Virus record (IMG/VR): IMGVR_UViG_3300037882_001770
Location: 62,001 to 126,000 of that record
Reading direction: 5' to 3' (one strand)
Length of the DNA stretch: 64,000 nucleotides
A model generated the notes under the pieces. The model searched no databases. It was not told where the DNA came from and saw only the letters and a program-made list of their open reading frames with translations. Below are positions 6,075 to 60,606 of the stretch, piece by piece. Position numbers and translations under genes: made by a program. Numbering within the stretch: the stretch's first letter is position 1; each line of letters begins with the position of its first letter.

Positions 6075-6503
6075 ATGGTATGGCTTTATGAACAAAAACA
6101 AATCGAAACACTACCCGAAGACTGTGTCGGTTTTGTCTATTTGATTACAAATAACATCACTGGCCGAAAGTATATTGGAAAAAAATTAGCAAAATTTAGT
6201 AAAACTTCATACAAAGTAGTAAAATTAAAGAACGGCAACAAAAAACGCAAGAAAATCAAAAGTAAAATAGATTCAGACTGGCAGCTATACTATGGCAGCA
6301 ACGATCAACTCAACAAAGACATTGCAGAGCTAGGCTCAGACAACTTCACAAGAGAAATATTATTTTATTGCAACTCAAAGGCATCCTGTAGTTACATAGA
6401 AGCTAGAGAACAATTTAATCATAGAGTATTAGAATCAGACGACTACTATAACGGACAGATTGTATGCCGTATACACGGTAGTCACATAAAAAATAAAATT
6501 TAG
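6075..6503 (+). CDS. Small GIY-YIG family nuclease
   Basis: GFVYLITNNITGRKYIGKK and YYGS...E...YN catalytic pattern; basic KLKNGNKKRKKIK insert; no NUMOD tail. Confidence 0.8.
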   Translation: MVWLYEQKQIETLPEDCVGFVYLITNNITGRKYIGKKLAKFSKTSYKVVKLKNGNKKRKKIKSKIDSDWQLYYGSNDQLNKDIAELGSDNFTREILFYCNSKASCSYIEAREQFNHRVLESDDYYNGQIVCRIHGSHIKNKI

Positions 6504-6944: not shown

Positions 6945-7457
6945 ATGAAAACCCTAAGAGAAATGATGGATTTAATCGAATCTGCTCAAACAGTAGCAGA
7001 ATTCGCACCAAGCGGCATTTATAAACCGCCTGTGATTCCTCGTGAACCTGGTAAGGATCCGTTTGAAGATGATCCCCGTAGCACAACTGTATCCAAAGTT
7101 CAACAACTATTAGACGCCGGCAAGAGTGTATTTGTATTGTTACCGGGTGCTAGAGGTCGTGCAATTGGCACACAAATTGGCGACGATCACTCTTGGTTAA
7201 ATGTTCAATACAAAGGCTGGAAAGATCCTAAGACTCGCAGTAACGCTCGATTAACAGTAAATCTAAAAGCCGACGACGATTCTTCACTAACGCTAACTCC
7301 GGGTAGTCAATTCACTGACAATAAAGATCGCCCATTTGACTATACTTTATCCGGTGAGGCTAAAACCAGCGGTCGCGGATTATTTGAAGTCGAGTTAGAA
7401 GAAGAAATATCCGACGATGCTGTGCGTCGTGTGGAACAACTCGCTCAGTATAAATAA
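6945..7457 (+). CDS. Hypothetical protein, possible internal head protein
   Basis: N-terminus MKTLREMMDLIES resembles a T4 capsid-targeting sequence; TAAATA late promoter 7 nt upstream. Confidence 0.5.
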   Translation: MKTLREMMDLIESAQTVAEFAPSGIYKPPVIPREPGKDPFEDDPRSTTVSKVQQLLDAGKSVFVLLPGARGRAIGTQIGDDHSWLNVQYKGWKDPKTRSNARLTVNLKADDDSSLTLTPGSQFTDNKDRPFDYTLSGEAKTSGRGLFEVELEEEISDDAVRRVEQLAQYK

Positions 7458-7516
7458 AGGTGTAGTTCGCGGGACGGCAATCCCCAACTACTCTAACGCT
7501 TTGAAGGAGCATCAGC
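7449..7516 (+). promoter_or_regulatory. Late promoter plus structured leader of GIY-YIG homing endonuclease
   Basis: TATAAATA, then stems TAGTT/AACTA, GGGA/TCCC and GCT/AGC (the last around the SD); same architecture at 48721-48789. Confidence 0.75.
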
Positions 7517-8092
7517 TTGAAACATATTTACAATAAACTTAATCCCCCATCTGGATTCTACATCTACGCTTATATTAGAGAAAACGGAACACCTTACTAT
7601 ATCGGCAAAGGCAAGGGTATACGAGCCTGGGTAAGTCATGCTAACAAAGGCAAAGGAGCTCATACACCCAAAGACAAATCAAGAATTATAGTTTGTGAAT
7701 CTAATTTAACAGAAATAGGTGCCTTTGCGTTAGAGCGTAGATACATTCGTTGGTATGGACGCAAAGATCTAGGCACAGGTATTTTACTAAACAAAACAGA
7801 CGGTGGCGAAGGCACAGCTAATACCATTAGAACCGTATCGGAAGAAACTAAAATAAAAATTGGATCTGCTAATAAGGGCAGAGTTCAGACCGAAGAAACA
7901 CGAGCTAAACGAAGTGCGTCTCTCAAAGGAAGAAAGCCTTCAGAAGAATCAAACATTAAGCGTGGAGCAAAAGCAAGAGGTAGAGTTCTTGGCCCACAGT
8001 CAGAAGAACGAAAAGCTAAAACAAGTCTTTTAATTAAACAATGGTGGGCGGAACGAAAAGCGTTAGAATTGATCGGGCCAGTCGCGAAATAA
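7517..8092 (+). mobile_element. Free-standing GIY-YIG homing endonuclease with NUMOD3-type repeats
   Basis: [30 protein letters not shown] and [26 protein letters not shown] repeats; TTG start behind AAGGAG. Confidence 0.85.
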
Positions 8093-20271: not shown

Positions 20272-20370
20272 CATAAATACTTGTCAACGTAATACTGCGT
20301 TTTATGCGGGTAATAAACCCCCCGCGTAGCGGCTAGAACCCGCATGGGACTTCTTTAAGGAGAAAACAAA
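20272..20370 (+). promoter_or_regulatory. Late promoter and GC-rich structured 5' leader
   Basis: CATAAATA at 20272; ATGCGGGT (20304) can pair with CCCGCGT (20321) or ACCCGCAT (20338); AAGGAG SD. Confidence 0.5.
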
Positions 20371-21156
20371 ATGGGTCGTCCACTTAAAATTAAAAAAATT
20401 ATCGAAACCGGCGGTAACGGTAAAGATATCGGTTTCAATGCATTTGATCAATTGACAGCACCAACATTGCCAATTGGCGGCACTATGGAATCTAGCATGT
20501 TTCTTGGTGTAGTCGGTGGTGTTCAACCAACTACAATTGCTACGGCAGCATATCCGATTGTTAAATGCGAAGTTAACATTACTAACAGCGCCAGCGGCCA
20601 AACTCCTGGACTAATCATCCGTCAAAAAGGTGCTCGCAAATTCATGGTTGCTACAACAACCGCAATTGATCCTGAAAATGCAGTACCAAACTCAACTGTA
20701 GCGTTGCGTATTGCTGTAGTTGGCGATACAGACTGGTCGGCTATGGGTGCTCCGGTAGGATATGGTATTGGCACAATCTTTACACCAACAGCAGCATCAG
20801 CAGCGGGCACAACCGGCACAGCACAGGAAGTAGGCACATGTGTACTAACTAGTGACCTAACACCAACTGCTGGCAATATGAGCATTAGTTTCTTTGCTGG
20901 CGCATCTGATTCTACTGAACAGGCAATTAGCAAATTAACTAACAAGTTCTTGAGCGACTTTACAGGTGGTGAAACAGGCGGCAGTGCCAATACAGGCGAT
21001 GTTTGGAATCCTGCACTAGTAGCGCAAAACGTTCGTTATGATGCCAATTTCTTCAGCGACGAAGGCACAGAAATCAAGTCTGGTGCCGAAGCAGAAACAT
21101 TTGCCAACACAACTGGCCAATTAGATCTTGCTATTGTTGAAAAATACACTTCGTAA
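20371..21156 (+). CDS. Hypothetical virion structural protein
   Basis: 261 aa, Thr/Ala/Gly-rich, MGRPLK start, IIRQKGARKFMV; strong SD. Confidence 0.55.
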   Translation: MGRPLKIKKIIETGGNGKDIGFNAFDQLTAPTLPIGGTMESSMFLGVVGGVQPTTIATAAYPIVKCEVNITNSASGQTPGLIIRQKGARKFMVATTTAIDPENAVPNSTVALRIAVVGDTDWSAMGAPVGYGIGTIFTPTAASAAGTTGTAQEVGTCVLTSDLTPTAGNMSISFFAGASDSTEQAISKLTNKFLSDFTGGETGGSANTGDVWNPALVAQNVRYDANFFSDEGTEIKSGAEAETFANTTGQLDLAIVEKYTS

Positions 21157-24268: not shown

Positions 24269-27200
24269 ATGGCCGTTACACGAATAAAGAATAATCAGAT
24301 TACTGATGCAACTGTTGTTGCTAGTGCAAAACTAGTTGACTACTCGATTACCGCTGGAAAAATTGCTAATAATTTAACCTACGGTAGTGATTTAACGATC
24401 GCCGGTAACCTAACCGTTAACGGAAATACAACCACAATTGACACCACTGTTGTAACAGTCGAAGATCCAATGATCAGCTTGGCCTACAACCAATCAGGAA
24501 GTCCTACACTGGACATTGGTTGGATCGGGGTGCGCGGCACTGCAAACAATGTGGCCTTTATCTGGGACGAAAGTGCCTTAGAATTTGCGGCAGCCTTTAC
24601 CACAGACGATATTGGTAACACCACTATTTCTCTTATTGGCTATGCCAATCTCCATGTTTTAAACGCCAACGTTGCTGGCAATATCTCTATAGGTGGCAAC
24701 GTTGACATTACTGGCAACATTACAAGTATCAACGTAACTGGCAACATTACCGGTGGCAATCTTAACACTCCGGGTCTAGCCAGCGTAGTTGGCAATGTGA
24801 TTGGTGGCAATATCAGTACAGCTGGATTGATTACAGCGGTTGGCAATATCAACTCGGGTGCTAACATTGTGGCAACTGCCAATGTAATTGGTGGCAATAT
24901 CAGCACAGCTGGATTGATTACAGCCGCAGGAAATATTTTAACAAGCGGTATAGTTACTGCTACGGGCAATGTCACTGGTGGTAATTTACTCACCGGTGGT
25001 CTGATTAGTGCCACAGGTAACATCAATTCAGATGCCAATATTGTGGCAACTGCCAACGTGATCGGTGGCAATGTTTCAACTGCTGGATTGGTAACTGCTA
25101 CAGGTAATGTCACAGGTGGTAATTTACTCACCGGCGGTCTGATTAGTGCCACGGGCAACATCAACGGTGGCAATTTGTATTCAGCTGGTACTGTTACCGC
25201 AGTTGGTAATATTACTGCACCGTATTTTATTGGTAATATTATTGGTAATGTTGATGCAGCAGGCGCTAACACACAGGTACAATTCAACGACAGTGACATC
25301 CTAGCTGGCTCAGCTGGATTTACATTTGACAAAACAGCAAATCTAGTAACAGTCACTGGCAACATTCAAGGCGGCAATTTAAGAACAGCAGGACTAGCGT
25401 CAGTAACAGGTAACATCAATTCAGATGCCAATATTGTGGCAACTGCCAACGTGATCGGTGGAAACATCTCAACTGCTGGATTGGTAACTGCTACAGGTAA
25501 TGTCACAGGTGGCAACTTGATTACCACAGGTGTTGCCACAGTAACAGGTAACATCAATTCAGATGCCAATATTGTGGCAACTGCCAACGTGATAGGTGGC
25601 AATATTTCAACAGCTGGATTGATAACAGCCACAGGAAATGTAACCGGTGGCAACTTGATTACCACAGGTGTTGCCACAGTAACGGGTAACATCAATTCGG
25701 GCGCCAACGTGATAGTGGCAGCCAACGTGATTGGTGGAAATATTTCAACAGCTGGTCTAGTGACTGCAACTGGAAACATTACCGGTGGCAACTTAAGATC
25801 GGCTGTGATAACTTCACCAAGTAGTGATATAACCATTACCAGTGATTCTGCAAATGCCAACGTTGTTATTACTCCTAAAGGCACCGGTAACGTAGTTCTT
25901 AACAATGCTTACATCAACAATTTAAGAGATCCTATACTAGCACAAGATGCTGCATCTAAACAATATGTTGATGATGCAGTGTCTTCGGGTATCACAATTC
26001 ATACTCCGGTACGAGTTGAGTCTCCAACAGCTCTCAACGGAACTTATGCGCAGGGCGGAACTACTGCTACGGTGACCAGCACAGTAGCAGGTAACACAGT
26101 GGTGTTTGGTTCTGCAATCAGTCCTCAAGTAAATGATCAATATTGGTTTACCAGTTCGTTCAGTGGTATTCTAGCAAACACACCATACTTTGTTGTAAGT
26201 GCACCAAACACCAGTGCTGCAGTGTTGAGTATCACCTACAGTGGTGCTCCGGTCACAGACATTACTAGCGCAACTGGGTTAACTCAACCAGTGAGAATTA
26301 ATTCTGGTGTTGGTGCTACATTGACCAATGCTGGTGCAAATGCAACATTGGTTATCGACGGCGTTACTCTAAGTAACACCAACCGTGTGTTGATCTATCA
26401 ACAGGCCAATGCAGTACACAACGGTGTATACGTGGTTAGTGAAGCTGGTAATGCTACCACTGCCTGGCAGTTGACACGTAGTGATGATATGAACACCTAT
26501 GCTCCTGATGACCTCAACGGATTAGATGCAGGTGATTATTTCTATGTTCAAGAAGGTGACACTGGTGCAGGCGAAAGTTATGTGATGACCGCTCCGGTTG
26601 GACCAACAATCATTGGTTATGCCAATCTAACATTTACACAGTTTAGCGCCAGTCAAGTTTACTCAGCCAATACGAGTGCTGGTTTGAGTTTGATTGGTAC
26701 AGTATTCTCAGCTAAAGTTGACAACAACACTACAGCATTTGACGGCGGCGGCAATATCATTGTTAAAGCCGGCGCAAATTTAACAACTCCAAACATTGGT
26801 GCTGCAACCGGAACAAGTCTAAGCGTAACCGGCAACATCACCGGTAGTAATGTTGTAGCTACTAATGGTTTTTTTGGCAACGTAAATCTAACAGGCGATA
26901 TTGTTGTTAACAGCTTAACTGCAAATACATTTGTTAGTGCCACTGGTAATGTGATCGGCGGTAATATCAGTACAGCTGGACTAGTAACCGCTACAGGAAA
27001 TGTAACTGGTAGCAACTTGATCACAGGTGGACTAGTAACTGCTACTGGTAACGTAACAGGCGGCAATTTAATTACTGCAGGGTTGATTACAGCCACGGGT
27101 AATGTAACCGGTAATAACGTTACTGCACTCAATCAACTTGGTGCAGCAACTCTGAGTCTAAGTGGCAACGTAACTTCTGCACTCAATGTAACTGGAAACA

Positions 27201-29917
27201 TTGCTGGTGGAAACATCTCCACAGCCGGATTAGTAACTGCCACAGGTAACATCAATTCGGGCGCTAACATCGTGGCCACTGCCAATGTGATTGGTGGAAA
27301 CATCTCAACTGCTGGACTAGTAACTGCCACAGGTAACATCAATTCGGGCGCTAACATCGTGGCCACTGCCAATGTAATTGGTGGTAACTTGATCACTGCA
27401 GGTGTTGCTACGGTAACAGGTAACATCAATTCAGATGCCAATATTGTGGCAACCGCCAATGTAATTGGTGGTAATATCTCAACTGCTGGATTAGTAACTG
27501 CCACAGGCAATGTCACAGGTGGTAACTTGATCACTGCAGGTGTTGCTACTGTAACAGGCAACATCAATTCGGGTGCTAACATCGTGGCCACTGCCAATGT
27601 AATTGGTGGAAACATCTCAACTGCTGGATTAGTAACTGCCACAGGTAATGTCACCGGCGGCAATATCAACACAGCCGGATTGGCTAGCGTCACAGGCAAC
27701 GTAATTGGTGGTAATATCTCAACTGCTGGATTGGTCAATGCCACAGGCAATATCACCGGCGGTAACATAATTGGAAACACCAGTGGTAAATTTGGTAATA
27801 TTGTAATCTCAGGCGATGACATCACCGACACAAACGGTCGAGTCAATATCAACACCGCCGGAGCCGATGTTGACTTTGCAGTCAACGGTGACACAGTAGC
27901 CAATGTGTTTTACGTTGACGCCGGAACAGGCACAGCTAGCTTTGGTACAGCTACACAAACTACCAATGCACTGGTATCATTTAATACACCAACATCAGTG
28001 TTGATGCCAGTGGGTAATACACTGCAACGTCCAAGCGTGGGCGTCACAGGTATGCTGCGTTTTAACACCACTGATAACAATTTTGAAGTATACGATAACT
28101 CAGCCTGGACCGCAGTTGGTGTTCCGGAGTTTACAGTTATTGCAGACAGTCAGTTCAATGGTGACGGATCAACTGTTGCGTTTACAATCCTTGCAGATCA
28201 AACAACCAATAGCTGTATTGTAAGTATCAACGGTGTGGTACAGATTCCAGTTACTGCATACTCTGTGTCTGGCACTACTTTGACATTTACAGAAGCTCCG
28301 CTAGCAGGCGACGTCATTGATGTACGTCAAATTACTAGTACTACCACAGTTACCGCTCTCAGCAACAGCAGCGGCAATGCCGAAGTCAGCGTGAGTGATA
28401 CTGATTCAATAGTAAACATTCGTGGCAATTTAGTTCCAATTGCTAGTAACACATACAGCCTTGGAAATGCAACACACAGCTGGGATAGTTTGTATGTAGC
28501 TGGTAATACAATTTATCTAGGCACATTACAGCTCAAACAAGCAAGTGCAGACACCTTTGCAGTTTACACCGCTGATGGTATAACTGCAGCCAACATTGAC
28601 GTGGGCAGTATTGACGTTCAGTCTATCACACAAGGGACCAGTGCAATTGGTATTGCTGGCAACAACGGCAATGCTTATATCACAGTGGGCGGAACAGCCA
28701 ATGTGGTTGTAACAGCAACCACTGGACAGTTTGTAACTGGAATACAGTCGGTTACTGGCAACATCACTGGCGGCAACATCAGTACAGCGGGACTAATAAC
28801 AGCCGTGGGTAACGTAACGGGCGGCAATATCAGAACCGGCGGACTAATCAGCGCTACTGGCAACATAACCGGTGCCAACTTGAGCATAACAGCAGATGCA
28901 GTAATTACCGGAAACTTAACAGTTAACGGTACCACTACCACAATCAACTCCAACACAATTACCACTAACGACAAGGCCATTACATTAGGTAACAATCAAT
29001 CAACTGGGTCTGCGTTGGATGGTTCTGGAATTGATGTTGGTAGCAACTCACTGGCAACATGGAAATTCAACAACGCAACTACTAGCTGGCAAAGCAATAT
29101 TGGTATTACACCAAGTGCCAATGCTACACTTTCCTTGGGCGGCACAAGTAATTATTGGGGAACTCTGTATGCCAATGCAGTTATAGTGGCCACAACAGCA
29201 GGAGTAACAGGCAATATCACCGGCGGAAATATATTAACAGCTGGATTGATCAGTGCAACTGGCACTATTACTGGCACAGGTAATATCACCGGCGGCAATA
29301 TCAACACAGCCGGATTGGCTAGTATTACTGGTAATGTAATTGGTGGTAATATCTCAACTGCTGGATTGATCAGTGCAACTGGCTCCATTACTGGTGCAGC
29401 TATAACAGGCTCAAGCCTAACAGTGGGCACCGGTAACGTAACAGCGGGCAACATTGTCAATGGCAATGCCAATGGAGTGGGTAATATTGGTAGTTCAACC
29501 ACATACTATAATACTGTATTTGCCAAAGCAACTTCGGCACAATATGCCGACCTGGCAGAAAAATATGTAGCTGATGCCGAATATGCTCCTGGTACGGTAG
29601 TGATATTTGGCGGCTCAGCAGAAGTCACTGTTAATGCGACAGATGCGGACCGTAGGGTTGCTGGGGTAGTATCTACAAATCCAAGCTACATCATGAACGG
29701 TGGGTTAGAAGCCGACTACGTGGCAACTGTGGCGTTAACTGGACGTGTACCGTGTTTTGTAATTGGCCCAGTTAAGAAAGGTGACATGATAGTTGCTGCT
29801 GGGTTAGGCCGTGCTAGAGCCGAGCAAGATCCACGAGTTGGTACTGTAATCGGTAAAGCACTTGAAGATTTTGATGGTATCGAAGGCACAATTGAAGTTG
29901 TGGTAGGTCGATTCTAA
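24269..29917 (+). CDS. Long tail fibre/adhesin (1882 aa) with repeat stalks and C-terminal chaperone-type domain
   Basis: Dozens of TGN(I/V)TGGN(I/L)xTAGL repeats; ends with YADLAEKY...VALTGRVPC...IGKA...IEVVVGR. Confidence 0.85.
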   Translation: MAVTRIKNNQITDATVVASAKLVDYSITAGKIANNLTYGSDLTIAGNLTVNGNTTTIDTTVVTVEDPMISLAYNQSGSPTLDIGWIGVRGTANNVAFIWDESALEFAAAFTTDDIGNTTISLIGYANLHVLNANVAGNISIGGNVDITGNITSINVTGNITGGNLNTPGLASVVGNVIGGNISTAGLITAVGNINSGANIVATANVIGGNISTAGLITAAGNILTSGIVTATGNVTGGNLLTGGLISATGNINSDANIVATANVIGGNVSTAGLVTATGNVTGGNLLTGGLISATGNINGGNLYSAGTVTAVGNITAPYFIGNIIGNVDAAGANTQVQFNDSDILAGSAGFTFDKTANLVTVTGNIQGGNLRTAGLASVTGNINSDANIVATANVIGGNISTAGLVTATGNVTGGNLITTGVATVTGNINSDANIVATANVIGGNISTAGLITATGNVTGGNLITTGVATVTGNINSGANVIVAANVIGGNISTAGLVTATGNITGGNLRSAVITSPSSDITITSDSANANVVITPKGTGNVVLNNAYINNLRDPILAQDAASKQYVDDAVSSGITIHTPVRVESPTALNGTYAQGGTTATVTSTVAGNTVVFGSAISPQVNDQYWFTSSFSGILANTPYFVVSAPNTSAAVLSITYSGAPVTDITSATGLTQPVRINSGVGATLTNAGANATLVIDGVTLSNTNRVLIYQQANAVHNGVYVVSEAGNATTAWQLTRSDDMNTYAPDDLNGLDAGDYFYVQEGDTGAGESYVMTAPVGPTIIGYANLTFTQFSASQVYSANTSAGLSLIGTVFSAKVDNNTTAFDGGGNIIVKAGANLTTPNIGAATGTSLSVTGNITGSNVVATNGFFGNVNLTGDIVVNSLTANTFVSATGNVIGGNISTAGLVTATGNVTGSNLITGGLVTATGNVTGGNLITAGLITATGNVTGNNVTALNQLGAATLSLSGNVTSALNVTGNIAGGNISTAGLVTATGNINSGANIVATANVIGGNISTAGLVTATGNINSGANIVATANVIGGNLITAGVATVTGNINSDANIVATANVIGGNISTAGLVTATGNVTGGNLITAGVATVTGNINSGANIVATANVIGGNISTAGLVTATGNVTGGNINTAGLASVTGNVIGGNISTAGLVNATGNITGGNIIGNTSGKFGNIVISGDDITDTNGRVNINTAGADVDFAVNGDTVANVFYVDAGTGTASFGTATQTTNALVSFNTPTSVLMPVGNTLQRPSVGVTGMLRFNTTDNNFEVYDNSAWTAVGVPEFTVIADSQFNGDGSTVAFTILADQTTNSCIVSINGVVQIPVTAYSVSGTTLTFTEAPLAGDVIDVRQITSTTTVTALSNSSGNAEVSVSDTDSIVNIRGNLVPIASNTYSLGNATHSWDSLYVAGNTIYLGTLQLKQASADTFAVYTADGITAANIDVGSIDVQSITQGTSAIGIAGNNGNAYITVGGTANVVVTATTGQFVTGIQSVTGNITGGNISTAGLITAVGNVTGGNIRTGGLISATGNITGANLSITADAVITGNLTVNGTTTTINSNTITTNDKAITLGNNQSTGSALDGSGIDVGSNSLATWKFNNATTSWQSNIGITPSANATLSLGGTSNYWGTLYANAVIVATTAGVTGNITGGNILTAGLISATGTITGTGNITGGNINTAGLASITGNVIGGNISTAGLISATGSITGAAITGSSLTVGTGNVTAGNIVNGNANGVGNIGSSTTYYNTVFAKATSAQYADLAEKYVADAEYAPGTVVIFGGSAEVTVNATDADRRVAGVVSTNPSYIMNGGLEADYVATVALTGRVPCFVIGPVKKGDMIVAAGLGRARAEQDPRVGTVIGKALEDFDGIEGTIEVVVGRF
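24700..25800 (+). repeat. Coding tandem repeat tract 1 in the long fibre (approximate limits)
   Basis: Near-identical copies of GGTAACATCAATTCAGATGCCAATATTGTGGCAACTGCCAACGTG. Confidence 0.8.
26820..27770 (+). repeat. Coding tandem repeat tract 2 in the long fibre (approximate limits)
   Basis: Includes an 87-nt-period duplication starting at 27239 and 27326. Confidence 0.8.
29447..29541 (+). repeat. 95-bp block identical to 32034-32128
   Basis: GGCAACATTGTCAATGG...GCAACTTCGGCACA compared base by base. Confidence 0.9.
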
Positions 29918-31133: not shown

Positions 31134-32516
31134 ATGCCAACAGTAGTGCAATTTAGACGTGGAAACACCACACAAAATAACAACTTCACCGGAGCAATTG
31201 GTGAGATATCCGTGGACACCACTCTGAATGTTCTACGAGTTGCAGACGGATCCACAGCTGGCGGATTTGCATTAGTTGGCCAATCTGCATCACAAACAAT
31301 AACAAATAAAATATATCAAGGATCGATTGTAAGTGTTACTGGTAATATCACAAGCGGAAATTTGCTAGTCAATACAGACGCAGTTATTACAGGAAATCTA
31401 ACAGTAAATGGCACAACAATCACAGTAAACAGTAACACTGTCACAATTAACGATAAGTTTATCAATGTTGCTAATAATGCTAGTACAAGTACATTGGCCG
31501 ATGGCGGTGGTATTGGAGTTGGCCCAGTGGGCGCAGAATATGCCAAGTTAGAGTATGATCAGGCAACCAATACATGGAACACTAATATAGGTATCTCTAT
31601 AACTGGTAATCTTAGTGCAACTGGCAACATCACAGGCGGTAATTTTGTAGGAACACTTAATGGGTCAGGCGCAAATGTAACGGCTATCAGTGCCACAAAT
31701 ATTTCTAGTGGTACTTTGAACCAGGCAAGATTGGCTAACTCTGCTGTAACATTGGGAAGCACATCACTGGTACTAGGTGCCACAGTCACAACAATAGCTG
31801 GCTTAACTAGTATAACAAGTAATACATTTGTTGGTGCATTAACTGGGGCGGCTACCACAGCCGGTACGGTAACCACAGCGGCGCAACCAAATATTACTAG
31901 CGTTGGTACGCTAACGACTGTCAGCGTAACAGGCAATGTCACTGGCGGTAATGTTCGAACAGCTGGATTGATCAGTGCAACTGGCTCCATTACTGGTTCT
32001 AGTTTAACAGTAGGCACAGGCAACATAACCGCAGGCAACATTGTCAATGGCAATGCCAATGGAGTGGGTAATATTGGTAGTTCAACCACATACTATAATA
32101 CTGTATTTGCCAAAGCAACTTCGGCACAGTACGCCGACCTGGCAGAGATGTATGTAGCTGATCAAAATTATTTGCCTGGCACCGTGGTGATATTTGGCGG
32201 CTCACACGAAATTACATCCGCAACGCATACACATAGTGCGCAAATTGCTGGAGTAATCTCAACCAATCCAAGTTATCTAATGAATAGTGCGCAAGAAGGA
32301 GCACATGTCTTGCCAGTAGCATTAACTGGCCGTGTTCCTTGTCAAGTAGTTGGTACAATAGCCAAGGGCGATAGATTGGTTGCTAGTAATTTACCTGGAG
32401 TTGCAACAGCATTAGACATGTTGCAATATCAACCCGGCTGTATCATTGGCAAGGCTATAGAAACATACAATTCTTTAGACGTTGGCGTTATTGAAGTGGT
32501 CGTTGGAAGATTATAA
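31134..32516 (+). CDS. Tail fibre protein with Mtd_N-like N-terminus and chaperone-type C-terminus
   Basis: VQFRRGNTTQNNNFTGAIGEISVDT; YADLAEMY...LTGRVPCQV...IEVVVGR. Confidence 0.75.
   Translation: MPTVVQFRRGNTTQNNNFTGAIGEISVDTTLNVLRVADGSTAGGFALVGQSASQTITNKIYQGSIVSVTGNITSGNLLVNTDAVITGNLTVNGTTITVNSNTVTINDKFINVANNASTSTLADGGGIGVGPVGAEYAKLEYDQATNTWNTNIGISITGNLSATGNITGGNFVGTLNGSGANVTAISATNISSGTLNQARLANSAVTLGSTSLVLGATVTTIAGLTSITSNTFVGALTGAATTAGTVTTAAQPNITSVGTLTTVSVTGNVTGGNVRTAGLISATGSITGSSLTVGTGNITAGNIVNGNANGVGNIGSSTTYYNTVFAKATSAQYADLAEMYVADQNYLPGTVVIFGGSHEITSATHTHSAQIAGVISTNPSYLMNSAQEGAHVLPVALTGRVPCQVVGTIAKGDRLVASNLPGVATALDMLQYQPGCIIGKAIETYNSLDVGVIEVVVGRL
32034..32128 (+). repeat. 95-bp block identical to 29447-29541
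   Basis: Direct comparison. Confidence 0.9.
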
Positions 32517-48718: not shown

Positions 48719-48720
48719 CG

Positions 48721-48789
48721 GTAAATAAAAGTGCCCTTCGCGATGCGTCAACATCCAAGGGCTCTAACAGTTTATAAGGAACTATCAGC
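48721..48789 (+). promoter_or_regulatory. Late promoter plus structured leader of HNH endonuclease
   Basis: GTAAATA, stems CCCTT/AAGGG, GATG/CATC and AGTT/AACT; conserved CGC, CTCTAAC and ATCAGC as at 7449-7516. Confidence 0.75.
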
Positions 48790-49434
48790 ATGAGTATTTA
48801 CACCTCTAAAAATTATCGTAAGATTTACGAACAATATCACGGCCCTATTCCAATGGATAACAATGGCCGAACCTATGATATACATCATGTTGATGGCGAT
48901 CATAACAATAATAATCCTGACAATTTAATAGCAGTTTCAATACAAGAACATCATGACATACATCAATCTCGTGGTGACTGGGGTGCGTGTTCTGCTATTT
49001 TAATGAGAATGAAAATATTGCCCGATGAATTATCAAAAAGAGCATCTGAATACAGTATTCAAAGAACCAAAGAAGGGAAGAATGCATTTTCTGGCGGAAG
49101 AATAACAAGAGAAGGAAACGCCAAAAGATTAGCCGACGGCACACATAATTTTTTAAAAAGACCAGATGGCACCAGCATGATATCAGATTTACATGCGGCA
49201 GGAAAAGCATCGTCTAACCCTGTAGTAAAAGAAAAATTAAGAGAAAAAGCATTCCGGCAAATAGCAGAAGGAAAACATGCATTTGTTGGATCAGCAAATA
49301 ATCTTAAAAGAATGTCCAACGGAACACACCCATCGCAAATTAAAAAAACCTGCCCGCATTGCAATAAAACTTGTGATACAGCCAACTACTCTAAGTGGCA
49401 CGGCGATAAGTGTAAAGTCTTAAAAACAGTATAA
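48790..49434 (+). mobile_element. Free-standing HNH homing endonuclease
   Basis: YRKIYEQYHGPIP...DIHHVDGDHNNNNPDNLIAV...H; repeated GxHxF units; C-terminal CPHC...HGDKC. Confidence 0.88.
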
Positions 49435-49462
49435 ATAACATATAATTTACAGGAAAGCAAAA

Positions 49463-59619: not shown

Positions 59620-59658
59620 CTATAATGTAACACTAACAACTTGGTTTTATAAATAAGC

Positions 59659-60606
59659 ATGCTCAAAGCATGCTTTTTTATGAATATACTCAATACTCTT
59701 AGAACCGAAAAAGACGGAACCTACAATACCAACATCGCAAATCGAGATCCCTTGCGTATCATTGATCATGCTCTGGGGTTTGACAAAAATTTCAAATGTG
59801 AAGTGTTGGATCAACTGCATGCTCAAACGGATCATCGCCGTACTGTGGCCACTGAGTATATATTCAACAAACAAATACGAAACACTTACTCTAAATTTGA
59901 TTTTGTATTCGATGTCAACACCTGGTATCAAGAAAACGGTATTGATAACCTACAAATATTTGAAAACTCTTCTAAAAAAAATCTAAATTCTTTTATTTGT
60001 TCCTTTAACAATTCGCCGCACGTTGGCAGAAAGTTACTGGTCAGTGCCTTACATTATTATGGATTTTTTAATCCAGAAACCTGCAGCAAAACATTCACAT
60101 TGGAGCCTTATGAGATAATTGGAACCCTGTATGATTATGTTGGAGATCGGGCGGACTGGTATAAAAAGTTTTTTAACGGTTCGCAATGCCCAGATTTTTA
60201 TCAGACACGCTACATATTTGGTTCTATGGTCAGCATGGATCATGGTAGAAATCAACAGCATCTCAAATCCAAAATTGACAACAGCTTTTTACATATAGTT
60301 AGCGAAACCATGCCTACCAGTTATTATCCATTTGTCACTGAAAAATTTTTATACAGTGTGGTTCAAAAAGGTTTGTTTTTGTCCTATGCACAGCCCAGGT
60401 GGCACCGACATGTTGAATATTATTACGGATTTCGACGCTACACTCGTATTTTTAACTATGACTTTGATAGTATAGCCAATCCTCCGCAACGACTAATTGC
60501 ATTACTTGACATGATATCAAAGTTCAGCAAACTAAAACCGTTAGATTGGCACGACTTGTATGCTGTAGAAAAAGAAACCATTGATTTTAATTTTGATCAT
60601 TTCTGA
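59659..60606 (+). CDS. Glycosyltransferase-like protein; frame stays open past the TGA to TAA at 60738
   Basis: IVSETM...VTEKF...GF.RYT.IFNYDFD pattern; in-frame TGA followed by 43 sense codons. Confidence 0.5.
   Translation: MLKACFFMNILNTLRTEKDGTYNTNIANRDPLRIIDHALGFDKNFKCEVLDQLHAQTDHRRTVATEYIFNKQIRNTYSKFDFVFDVNTWYQENGIDNLQIFENSSKKNLNSFICSFNNSPHVGRKLLVSALHYYGFFNPETCSKTFTLEPYEIIGTLYDYVGDRADWYKKFFNGSQCPDFYQTRYIFGSMVSMDHGRNQQHLKSKIDNSFLHIVSETMPTSYYPFVTEKFLYSVVQKGLFLSYAQPRWHRHVEYYYGFRRYTRIFNYDFDSIANPPQRLIALLDMISKFSKLKPLDWHDLYAVEKETIDFNFDHF

What the first reader, a model, noticed from the sequence alone, without database searches (positions are those of the whole stretch)
7449..7516. Covarying ~55-nt leader shared by two unrelated homing endonucleases
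Seen in sequence: the leaders of the GIY-YIG gene (7517) and the HNH gene (48790) align segment by segment. Copy A: TAGTT-CGC-GGGA-CGGCAA-TCCC-C-AACTA-CTCTAAC-GCT-TTGAAGG-AGC-ATCAGC-start. Copy B: CCCTT-CGC-GATG-CGTCAA-CATC-C-AAGGG-CTCTAAC-AGTT-TATAAGG-AACT-ATCAGC-start. All three stems differ in sequence yet keep pairing. The unpaired parts (CGC, CGxCAA loop, C bulge, CTCTAAC, AAGG, ATCAGC) are conserved, and both copies follow a TAAATA late promoter. Established: T4 I-TevI-type genes use RBS-occluding hairpins. Inference: conserved unpaired nucleotides suggest a ligand- or protein-binding RNA module that travels with selfish nucleases of different folds. I do not recognise it as a named family.
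Basis: partly seen in the sequence, partly recalled or inferred. Interest (0 to 1): 0.88.

Follow-up and report, generated by a model that had tools for sequence, protein, structure and literature searches.

The report
Antisense RNA module of homing-endonuclease cassettes
The shared leader in front of two unrelated homing-endonuclease genes is real and belongs to a large family absent from Rfam, but its base-pairing fits the opposite strand, so it most likely encodes a ~70-nt antisense RNA that restrains the selfish nuclease gene, much as the transposon IS10 restrains its transposase.

Summary
Both leaders (7449-7516 and 48720-48789) share a late-promoter box, two covarying hairpins and conserved linkers. 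There are 130 copies in the window plus 119 uncultured viral contigs, nearly all upstream of endonucleases from at least four N-terminal domain families. Nothing in Rfam 15 matches, and no copy was found in cultured-phage records.

The interpretation changes. Non-Watson-Crick cells are A.C on the gene strand and therefore G.U on the opposite strand (293 against 8). The opposite strand pairs in 98.7% of cells against 86.2%, and folds about 5 kcal/mol better in 111 of 121 copies.

A TATTTA box, the reverse complement of the late-promoter core, lies 4-6 nt beyond the helix in all three codon phases. The second hairpin is followed by a U-rich tail.

Best reading (confidence about 0.55): face-to-face late promoters make a ~70-nt cis-antisense RNA covering the endonuclease 5' UTR and Shine-Dalgarno sequence. 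No transcript data exist. A T4 I-TevI-type RBS-occluding hairpin is not supported.

The parts
7449..7456 (+). Copy A sense late-promoter box TATAAATA. It overlaps the stop codon of ORF 6945-7457. On the minus strand it forms the U-rich tail of the predicted antisense RNA.
   Evidence: All 17 ATAAATA sites in the window lie sense-oriented just upstream of ORFs. TAAATA lies 5 nt from the first base of the stem in 64 of 94 copies.
7462..7491 (-). Copy A hairpin 2 of the predicted antisense RNA. Outer 6 bp, a G-C pair flanked by two bulged G, inner 4-5 bp. It is followed by AC and a U-rich tract, so it looks like a terminator.
   Evidence: All 11 pairs show compensatory changes and 98.6% of cells are paired. 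Fold. Tail has a mean of 6.7 U in 12 nt.
7493..7515 (-). Copy A hairpin 1 of the predicted antisense RNA. The 7-nt loop CCUUCAA is complementary to the Shine-Dalgarno sequence.
   Evidence: Five of 8 pairs covary; the three outer pairs, including one G.U, are invariant.
7525..7530 (-). Copy A TATTTA box inside codons 3-5 of the endonuclease ORF. It reads TAAATA on the minus strand and is the predicted antisense late promoter. It lies 8 nt from the helix here, against 5 nt in most copies.
7517..8092 (+). Copy A endonuclease gene: GIY-YIG-like N-terminus (YYIGKG type) plus NUMOD3, with a TTG start.
48720..48727 (+). Copy B sense late-promoter box GGTAAATA. It is also the start of the inserted cassette.
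48733..48762 (-). Copy B hairpin 2 of the predicted antisense RNA, followed by ACUUUUAUUUA.
48764..48788 (-). Copy B hairpin 1 of the predicted antisense RNA: 9-bp stem, loop CCUUAUA.
48795..48800 (-). Copy B TATTTA box in codons 2-4 of the HNH ORF. It is the predicted antisense late promoter, 5 nt from the helix end.
48790..49434 (+). Copy B HNH_3 endonuclease gene.
48719..49462 (+). The whole inserted cassette of copy B: promoter, antisense module, HNH gene and a 3' ATAAATA (49431-49437) that serves the downstream gene.
   Evidence: In about 50 related contigs the two flanking genes lie 4-6 nt apart with no motif. Only the window's own contig and L134 carry an insert (744 and about 1000 bp), and both have the motif.

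Best explanation
The element is the 5' control module of free-standing homing-endonuclease cassettes in a clade of uncultured T4-like jumbo phages, probably from fresh water. It holds two late promoters that face each other about 75 bp apart.

The left promoter (TAAATA, then about 5 nt, then G) starts the endonuclease mRNA at the foot of a hairpin. The right promoter is read as TATTTA inside codons 2-4 of the endonuclease. It points backwards and would start a ~70-nt RNA at the G opposite the last C of ATCAGC.

That RNA folds into two hairpins:
- Hairpin 1 has an 8-9 bp stem with two G.U pairs and a CCUU loop complementary to the Shine-Dalgarno sequence.
- Hairpin 2 has about 11 bp with two bulged G. 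It is followed by AC and a U-rich tract, which is the complement of the left promoter, so it looks like an intrinsic terminator.

The RNA is fully complementary to the endonuclease 5' UTR. It would pair with the mRNA, beginning loop-to-loop at the Shine-Dalgarno hairpin, and block translation or trigger cleavage. This would keep the nuclease low, as RNA-OUT does for the IS10 transposase.

Shown here: the structure, its strand preference, the conserved promoter-like boxes and their spacing, membership of the cassette, and the association with endonucleases.

Inferred: that the antisense RNA is made, that it ends at the U tract, and that it represses the endonuclease.
For: 1. Strand asymmetry. 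On an alignment made without any structure (A1), non-Watson-Crick cells are A.C 41 against G.U 2 on the gene strand. On the model-based alignment of 121 distinct copies there are 293 G.U cells on the antisense strand against 8 A.C, or 67 against 8 without the two invariant G.U pairs. Cells pair in 98.7% on the antisense strand against 86.2% on the sense strand.

2. CTCTAAC and ATCAGC pair only on the antisense strand. In about 20 copies found by the model but not by the word pattern, this helix covaries: A-U to G.U, G-C or U-A, and U.G to U-A, C-G or A-U.

3. The antisense strand folds better. Copy A gives -21.1 kcal/mol (z -2.5) against -14.3 (z -1.3); copy B gives -22.4 (z -3.5) against -15.0 (z -2.6). 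The family mean is -17.2 against -12.3, with the antisense strand more stable in 111 of 121 copies.

4. The TATTTA box is present in 101 of 117 unique contexts. It lies 5 nt from the helix end in 74 copies, 4 nt in 11 and 6 nt in 13. It occupies codon phases 74/15/12. Within one HNH family the N-terminus switches between MIFI and MYLQ while the box stays. This mirrors the sense box, which lies 5 nt from the stem in 64 of 94 copies.

5. ATAAATA is this phage's gene promoter: all 17 sites in the window are sense-oriented just upstream of ORFs. The antisense box is a full ATAAATA in 88 of 121 copies.

6. TATTTA is kept in three copies that lack the sense TAAATA, and the two boxes never covary. 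That argues against a long-range RNA helix between them.

7. The tail has a mean of 6.7 U in the 12 nt after hairpin 2.

8. The motif is present only where an endonuclease cassette is inserted.

9. Precedent exists. CfrI is an antisense RNA to a homing-endonuclease gene in the T4-like cyanophage S-PM2 (PMC2984593).
Against: - There is no transcript evidence of any kind. The phages are uncultured, and none of the cultured-phage records examined carries the motif.
- In the window itself both antisense boxes read GTAAATA, not the ATAAATA of the 17 gene promoters, so they may be weak.
- The U tract starts 2 nt after a bulged stem, and the simple terminator scan did not flag it.
- A cis-antisense RNA does not need invariant sequence. 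Even so, three stem pairs, two bulged G and two A are invariant. Something more than pairing is therefore involved.
- The model-based alignment leans towards the antisense structure it was built from. G.T pairs would also be tolerated in a minus-strand DNA hairpin.
- The position of the transcription start relative to TATAAATA is taken from my knowledge of T4 and was not checked here.
Confidence: 0.55

Rival explanations
1. This is a sense-strand 5' UTR element. The hairpins form in the endonuclease mRNA. They would control its translation or stability by occluding or presenting the RBS, by acting as a 5'-terminal stabiliser hairpin, or by binding a protein or ligand at conserved single-stranded segments.
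For: The large hairpin and the short Shine-Dalgarno hairpin also form on the sense strand and covary there. The sense late transcript would start at the foot of the large hairpin. T4-family endonuclease genes are known to use late promoters plus RBS-sequestering hairpins (PMC2988022). Dassa et al. reported conserved hairpins in endonuclease 5' UTRs from ocean metagenomes (PMC2677866).
Against: A.C cells outnumber G.U cells 41 to 2 on this strand. The most conserved segments cannot pair on this strand and have no evident partner. The sense fold is weaker, with z of -1.3 and -2.6. The Shine-Dalgarno sequence is in a loop, and its predicted accessibility does not differ between read-through and late RNA (0.65 against 0.68). 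This reading does not explain a TATTTA box kept in three codon phases.
Confidence: 0.2
2. This is a DNA-level module. The conserved ~90 bp would be a recombination or portability cassette, like the promoter-stem-loop cassettes that shuffle genes in T4-type phages, or a minus-strand DNA hairpin used during replication or homing. Its conservation would then reflect shared ancestry and gene conversion among cassettes, not an RNA.
For: The same 5' module is joined to at least four unrelated nuclease domains. It even dictates their first codons, giving MxIY, MYL or MIFI. It marks the exact 5' edge of the insert. Several copies persist next to decayed endonuclease genes. G.T pairs are tolerated in DNA hairpins.
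Against: Sixteen of 19 pairs show compensatory changes while the stems differ widely in sequence. That indicates selection for pairing, not mere ancestry. A recombination site would conserve sequence, not structure. Both boxes match the phage's own promoter and keep promoter-like spacing.
Confidence: 0.12
3. This is an insulator. The hairpin plus U tract would only stop stray minus-strand transcription, and the TATTTA box would be a by-product of nuclease N-termini or AT-rich codon use.
For: A hairpin followed by a U-rich tail is present on the minus strand. Many GIY-YIG proteins begin with an Ile-Tyr strand.
Against: Neighbouring genes are on the plus strand, so there is little minus-strand transcription to stop. 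The box is kept in three phases and across unrelated nucleases, at fixed distance from the helix. Hairpin 1 and its anti-Shine-Dalgarno loop would have no role.
Confidence: 0.05

Closest known systems
IS10/Tn10 RNA-OUT and RNA-IN antisense control of transposase (comparison from my own knowledge)
   Same: A selfish element's nuclease or transposase gene has an outward-facing promoter inside its 5' end. That promoter faces the gene's own promoter. It makes a ~70-nt stable stem-loop RNA complementary to the 5' UTR and RBS of the mRNA.
   Different: Here both promoters are T4-type late promoters. The RNA has two hairpins. There is no sequence relation to IS10. The element is a homing-endonuclease cassette in a lytic phage. 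Expression and repression are not shown.
CfrI antisense RNA of cyanophage S-PM2 (Millard et al. 2010, as described in PMC2984593)
   Same: It is an antisense RNA overlapping a homing-endonuclease gene in a T4-like phage.
   Different: CfrI is about 225 nt and links the endonuclease gene to psbA. It is not described as a compact two-hairpin module shared by many endonuclease families. BLAST of the motif against cultured-phage records found nothing, and the model found nothing in the four cyanophage endonuclease loci fetched. S-PM2 itself was not fetched.
T4 I-TevI / segB / Aeh1 mobE regulation: a late promoter plus an RBS-sequestering hairpin (PMC2988022)
   Same: A late promoter sits immediately upstream of a homing-endonuclease gene, with RNA structure around the RBS. 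The apparent purpose is to limit nuclease expression.
   Different: In T4 the inhibitory hairpin forms only in longer early or middle transcripts and buries the Shine-Dalgarno sequence. Here that sequence is in a loop, the structure lies downstream of the late start, and the pairing favours the other strand.
Conserved 5' UTR hairpins of free-standing endonucleases in 'fractured genes' (Dassa et al. 2009, PMC2677866)
   Same: These are metagenomic phage endonuclease genes of different families. They share a hairpin with a TATAAATA box and two conserved complementary motifs.
   Different: Those untranslated regions are 27-51 nt and were interpreted on the sense strand.

Membership tests
Any Rfam 15 family | Covariance-model match at or near the gathering score | tested here: not met
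   The window at gathering score gives only freshwater-2, elsewhere in the window. At E up to 10 the two loci give only chance hits of 9-14 bits.
T4-type RBS-sequestering hairpin (I-TevI, segB, mobE) | Late promoter immediately upstream of the endonuclease ORF | tested here: met
   A TAAATA box lies 3-5 nt before the structure in 88 of 94 copies. The same heptamer precedes 17 genes in the window.
T4-type RBS-sequestering hairpin (I-TevI, segB, mobE) | The Shine-Dalgarno sequence is buried in a stable helix that needs sequence upstream of the late start, so late transcripts free it | tested here: not met
   The Shine-Dalgarno sequence lies in the loop of a 3-4 bp hairpin downstream of the start. 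Its unpaired probability is 0.65 in read-through RNA and 0.68 in late RNA.
Cis-antisense RNA control of a mobile element (IS10 RNA-OUT type) | Outward promoter inside the 5' end of the gene, facing the gene's own promoter | tested here: met
   This is met at sequence level only. The TATTTA box is the reverse complement of the late-promoter core. It occurs in 101 of 117 copies, 4-6 nt from the helix, in all three codon phases.
Cis-antisense RNA control of a mobile element (IS10 RNA-OUT type) | Stable structured antisense RNA complementary to the 5' UTR and RBS | tested here: met
   98.7% of cells are paired, and 16 of 19 pairs have compensatory changes. G.U cells outnumber A.C cells 293 to 8, and the antisense MFE is better in 111 of 121 copies. 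The loop CCUU is complementary to the Shine-Dalgarno sequence.
Cis-antisense RNA control of a mobile element (IS10 RNA-OUT type) | The antisense transcript exists and lowers expression of the gene | not testable with these tools
   No expression data are available. The phages are uncultured.
Intrinsic terminator (for the 3' end of the antisense RNA) | G+C-rich hairpin directly followed by a U tract | tested here: inconclusive
   The hairpin is followed by AC and then U4AU3A in copy B; the family mean is 6.7 U in 12 nt. The stem is bulged, and the simple scan did not flag it.
CfrI (S-PM2) | Sequence or structure similarity to the S-PM2 antisense RNA locus | tested here: not met
   No BLAST match of the motif was found in 50,697 phage records, a collection of GenBank phage genomes. 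S-PM2 was not fetched or searched directly.

The most novel reading that the evidence does not exclude
Free-standing homing endonucleases of a widespread clade of uncultured jumbo T4-like phages carry a dedicated, portable antisense-RNA gene built from two face-to-face late promoters. This ~70-nt RNA has an invariant G.U pair and invariant bulged G. It would be a family-wide brake on nucleases of any fold, possibly acting in trans between copies or through a common protein partner. That would make it the first RNA regulator known to be specific to homing-endonuclease cassettes.
Probability: 0.45. Interest if true: 0.8.

Novelty: new variant of a known kind. Interest (0 to 1): 0.72.

Why it matters
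How free-standing homing endonucleases are kept harmless to the phage that carries them is known only case by case in T4 and Aeh1, through promoter choice, RBS hairpins and autorepression. A portable RNA module shared by GIY-YIG, HNH and other nucleases would show that regulation travels with the selfish gene as a cassette. It would also show that phages reuse the antisense logic of transposons.

The work also gives:
- a clean new structured-RNA family, with more than 120 covarying members, that could be added to Rfam;
- a way to flag endonuclease cassettes in viral metagenomes;
- an example of a promoter imposing the first codons on unrelated proteins.

Tried and rejected
- Rfam at gathering score and at E up to 10 gave no family.
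- I considered a long-range helix between the sense TAAATA and the TATTTA box in read-through RNA, which would be a T4-like occlusion. It appears in the MFE fold of copy B only, at ensemble frequency 0.04. The two boxes never covary. TATTTA is kept where the sense box is absent, in L017, L023 and L065. Predicted accessibility of the Shine-Dalgarno sequence and start codon does not change. Rejected.
- I considered that TATTTA is only an Ile-Tyr protein motif. It occurs in three codon phases and in unrelated nucleases. Rejected.
- I looked for the motif in cultured phages. BLAST with the window region and with the best-scoring copy found nothing. The model found nothing upstream of the closest cultured homologues of endonuclease A, in Synechococcus phages S-SRM01, S-N03, RN05-S and B23.
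- The genome collection gave only 5 short contigs from metagenome-assembled genomes, at least three of them from Swedish-lake bins, so there is no host clue.
- Single-linkage clustering of whole endonuclease proteins merged everything through shared C-terminal DNA-binding modules. I replaced it with clustering on the N-terminus.
- A first fixed-spacing pattern found nothing, because the two copies differ in length.
- Literature searches for the motif words and for antisense control of phage endonucleases found only CfrI and the T4 hairpin work.

Full report
**1. The observation**

- Copy A runs from TATAAATA (7449-7456) to ATCAGC (7511-7516), ahead of a TTG start at 7517.
- Copy B runs from GGTAAATA (48720-48727) to ATCAGC (48784-48789), ahead of ATG at 48790.

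The composite word pattern occurs exactly twice in 64 kb, against none expected. A covariance model run without filters finds only these two copies (87.6 and 82.7 bits; next hit 17.6 bits).

The downstream genes are unrelated nucleases.
- ORF 7517-8092 has NUMOD3, a sub-threshold GIY-YIG match and PHROG 314 'homing endonuclease'.
- ORF 48790-49434 is HNH_3.

**2. It is a large family**

About 100 of these show the whole architecture: late-promoter box, two hairpins, linkers and start codon. Model and profile searches of these loci plus the window give 130 copies. About 20 of them lack the exact words used for the scan, and there are up to four copies per contig.

Of 102 distinct complete downstream ORFs, the N-terminal domains fall into these clusters:

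| Cluster | Members |
|---|---|
| YYIGKG-type GIY-YIG-like (as in copy A) | 32 |
| TGLKYLG type | 29 |
| HNH | 26 |
| Classical GIY-YIG | 5 |
| Singletons | 10 |

PHROGs calls most of them homing endonucleases: family 314 in 53, family 655 in 27, family 12324 in 12, plus several HNH families. Pfam finds NUMOD3, HNH, HNH_3, GIY-YIG, TnsA-N and Vsr domains. The association with selfish nucleases of different folds is therefore confirmed.

**3. It belongs to the inserted cassette**

The window comes from a 317-kb viral contig. The window holds portal, major head, sheath and large-terminase genes of a T4-like jumbo myovirus.

In about 50 related contigs the genes flanking copy B lie 4-6 nt apart and carry no motif. 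Only the window's own contig and L134 have an insert (744 and about 1000 bp), and both begin with the motif. The insert spans 48719-49462. It ends with its own ATAAATA (49431-49437), which would serve the downstream gene.

**4. The structure is real, but it fits the other strand**

On 94 unique copies aligned without structural information, RNAalifold predicts 14 pairs, 13 with compensatory changes. The exceptions are lopsided: 41 A.C cells against 2 G.U cells on the gene strand. An A.C on one strand is a G.U on the other.

CUGAU, the complement of ATCAG, pairs with GUUAG, the complement of CTAAC, through C-G, U-A, G.U, A-U and U.G. This extends the small hairpin to 8-9 bp, with a 7-nt loop that begins CCUU.

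| | Antisense MFE, kcal/mol (z) | Sense MFE, kcal/mol (z) |
|---|---|---|
| Copy A | -21.1 (-2.5) | -14.3 (-1.3) |
| Copy B | -22.4 (-3.5) | -15.0 (-2.6) |

The words were fixed by my search pattern, so I examined the copies found only by the model. There the helix covaries: A-U changes to G.U, G-C or U-A, and U.G changes to U-A, C-G or A-U.

On the model-based alignment of 121 distinct copies:
- 98.7% of cells pair on the antisense strand, against 86.2% on the sense strand;
- 16 of 19 pairs have compensatory changes, and none of 500 shuffles reaches any of the five measures;
- G.U cells outnumber A.C cells 293 to 8, or 67 to 8 without the two invariant G.U pairs;
- the antisense fold is more stable in 111 of 121 copies (mean -17.2 against -12.3 kcal/mol).

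That alignment leans towards the structure it was built on. The counts, made on MAFFT alignments, do not.

**5. A second promoter box**

Just inside the ORF lies TATTTA, the reverse complement of the late-promoter core.
- It is present in 101 of 117 unique contexts.
- It lies 5 nt from the helix end in 74 copies, 4 nt in 11 and 6 nt in 13.
- It occupies all three codon phases (74, 15 and 12).
- Within a single HNH family the protein begins MIFI or MYLQ while the DNA box is unchanged.

The sense box shows the same geometry: TAAATA, then 5 nt (64 of 94 copies), then the G that opens the large hairpin. In this phage ATAAATA behaves as the gene promoter, because all 17 occurrences are sense-oriented just upstream of ORFs. 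The antisense box is a full ATAAATA in 88 of 121 copies.

From my knowledge of T4, transcripts start about 5-7 nt after the box. On that basis both RNAs would begin at the foot of a helix.

After the second antisense hairpin come AC and a U-rich tract, which is the complement of the sense promoter (mean 6.7 U in 12 nt). This looks like a terminator. The simple scan did not flag the bulged stem.

**6. Mechanism**

The simplest reading is a compact antisense-RNA gene of about 70 nt between two face-to-face late promoters. The RNA is complementary to the whole 5' UTR of the endonuclease mRNA. Its CCUU loop faces the Shine-Dalgarno loop of the mRNA, the usual entry point for antisense pairing. It would limit translation or stability of a nuclease that has a strong Shine-Dalgarno sequence. 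This is the logic of IS10 RNA-OUT and RNA-IN.

The alternative I tested first was a T4-like occlusion helix between TAAATA and TATTTA in read-through RNA. It fails on three counts:
- the boxes never covary;
- TATTTA persists in three copies without the sense box;
- predicted accessibility of the Shine-Dalgarno sequence and start codon is the same in read-through and late RNA.

**7. What remains open**

There is no transcript evidence. None of the cultured-phage records examined carries the motif. The genome collection gave only five short contigs from metagenome-assembled genomes, at least three from Swedish-lake bins.

In the window the antisense boxes are GTAAATA, not ATAAATA.

Three outer pairs of hairpin 1 (including one G.U), two bulged G and two flanking A are invariant in 121 copies. 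Pure cis-antisense pairing does not require this, so a protein or RNase partner or trans action between copies is possible.

Some copies stay intact beside decayed endonuclease genes.

**8. Comparison and novelty**

Rfam 15 has no such family. The literature held here describes three related things:
- RBS-sequestering hairpins for T4-family endonucleases (PMC2988022);
- conserved 5' UTR hairpins of metagenomic endonucleases (PMC2677866);
- one antisense RNA, CfrI, overlapping an endonuclease gene in cyanophage S-PM2 (PMC2984593).

None describes this module. I rate it a new variant of a known kind: antisense control of a selfish gene, realised as a portable two-promoter cassette. Confidence in the antisense reading is about 0.55.

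Noticed in passing
window 20285-20373 (+): There is a freshwater-2 RNA (RF02980, 69.3 bits against a gathering score of 49.9). It lies right after the late-promoter box ATAAATA at 20273 and just before ORF 20371-21156. It is the only Rfam family in the window.
   Followed up: no
window 49431-49437 and the empty sites in L121-L136: The HNH cassette ends with its own ATAAATA, which overlaps the endonuclease stop codon. In relatives without the cassette the flanking genes lie 4-6 nt apart, and the upstream gene's last codons supply the Shine-Dalgarno sequence. The insert therefore replaces translational coupling with a new promoter.
   Followed up: partly
window 6075-6503 (+): A SegE-type GIY-YIG ORF (PF19835, E 1.7e-32) sits next to a gp46-like SMC/AAA_23 gene. 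It has neither the motif nor a late-promoter box, so not every nuclease-like gene here uses the module.
   Followed up: partly
L082:7705-7790, L054:4394-4480, L031:1051-1134, L095:3258-3338: These motif copies score as well as any, yet they sit next to truncated, frameshifted or missing endonuclease ORFs. In L054 the next gene is a 1428-aa ORF 125 nt downstream.
   Followed up: partly
window 24269-29917 and 31134-32516 (+): A 1882-aa ORF is built of degenerate repeats with 51, 87 and 138-nt periods. It shares an 85%-identical 227-nt stretch with the 460-aa ORF further on. It looks like a fibre or decoration protein.
   Followed up: no
window, 17 ATAAATA sites (for example 2265, 14427, 24241, 41583, 48086): The count is no higher than chance (17 against 14 expected). 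However, every site is sense-oriented and about 5-130 nt (most under 35 nt) upstream of an ORF start. Most are preceded by C, which gives a CATAAATA-like late-promoter consensus for this phage.
   Followed up: partly
window 59656-59685 (+): The self-complementary word AGCATGCT occurs twice, followed by a T run, directly after the ATAAATA at 59649. This is a terminator-like hairpin that overlaps the start of ORF 59659-60606.
   Followed up: no
L017:1335-1436, L023, L065: Three copies have GTCAACAAAAATG in place of the sense TAAATA box. They keep the U-rich complement and the TATTTA box.
   Followed up: partly
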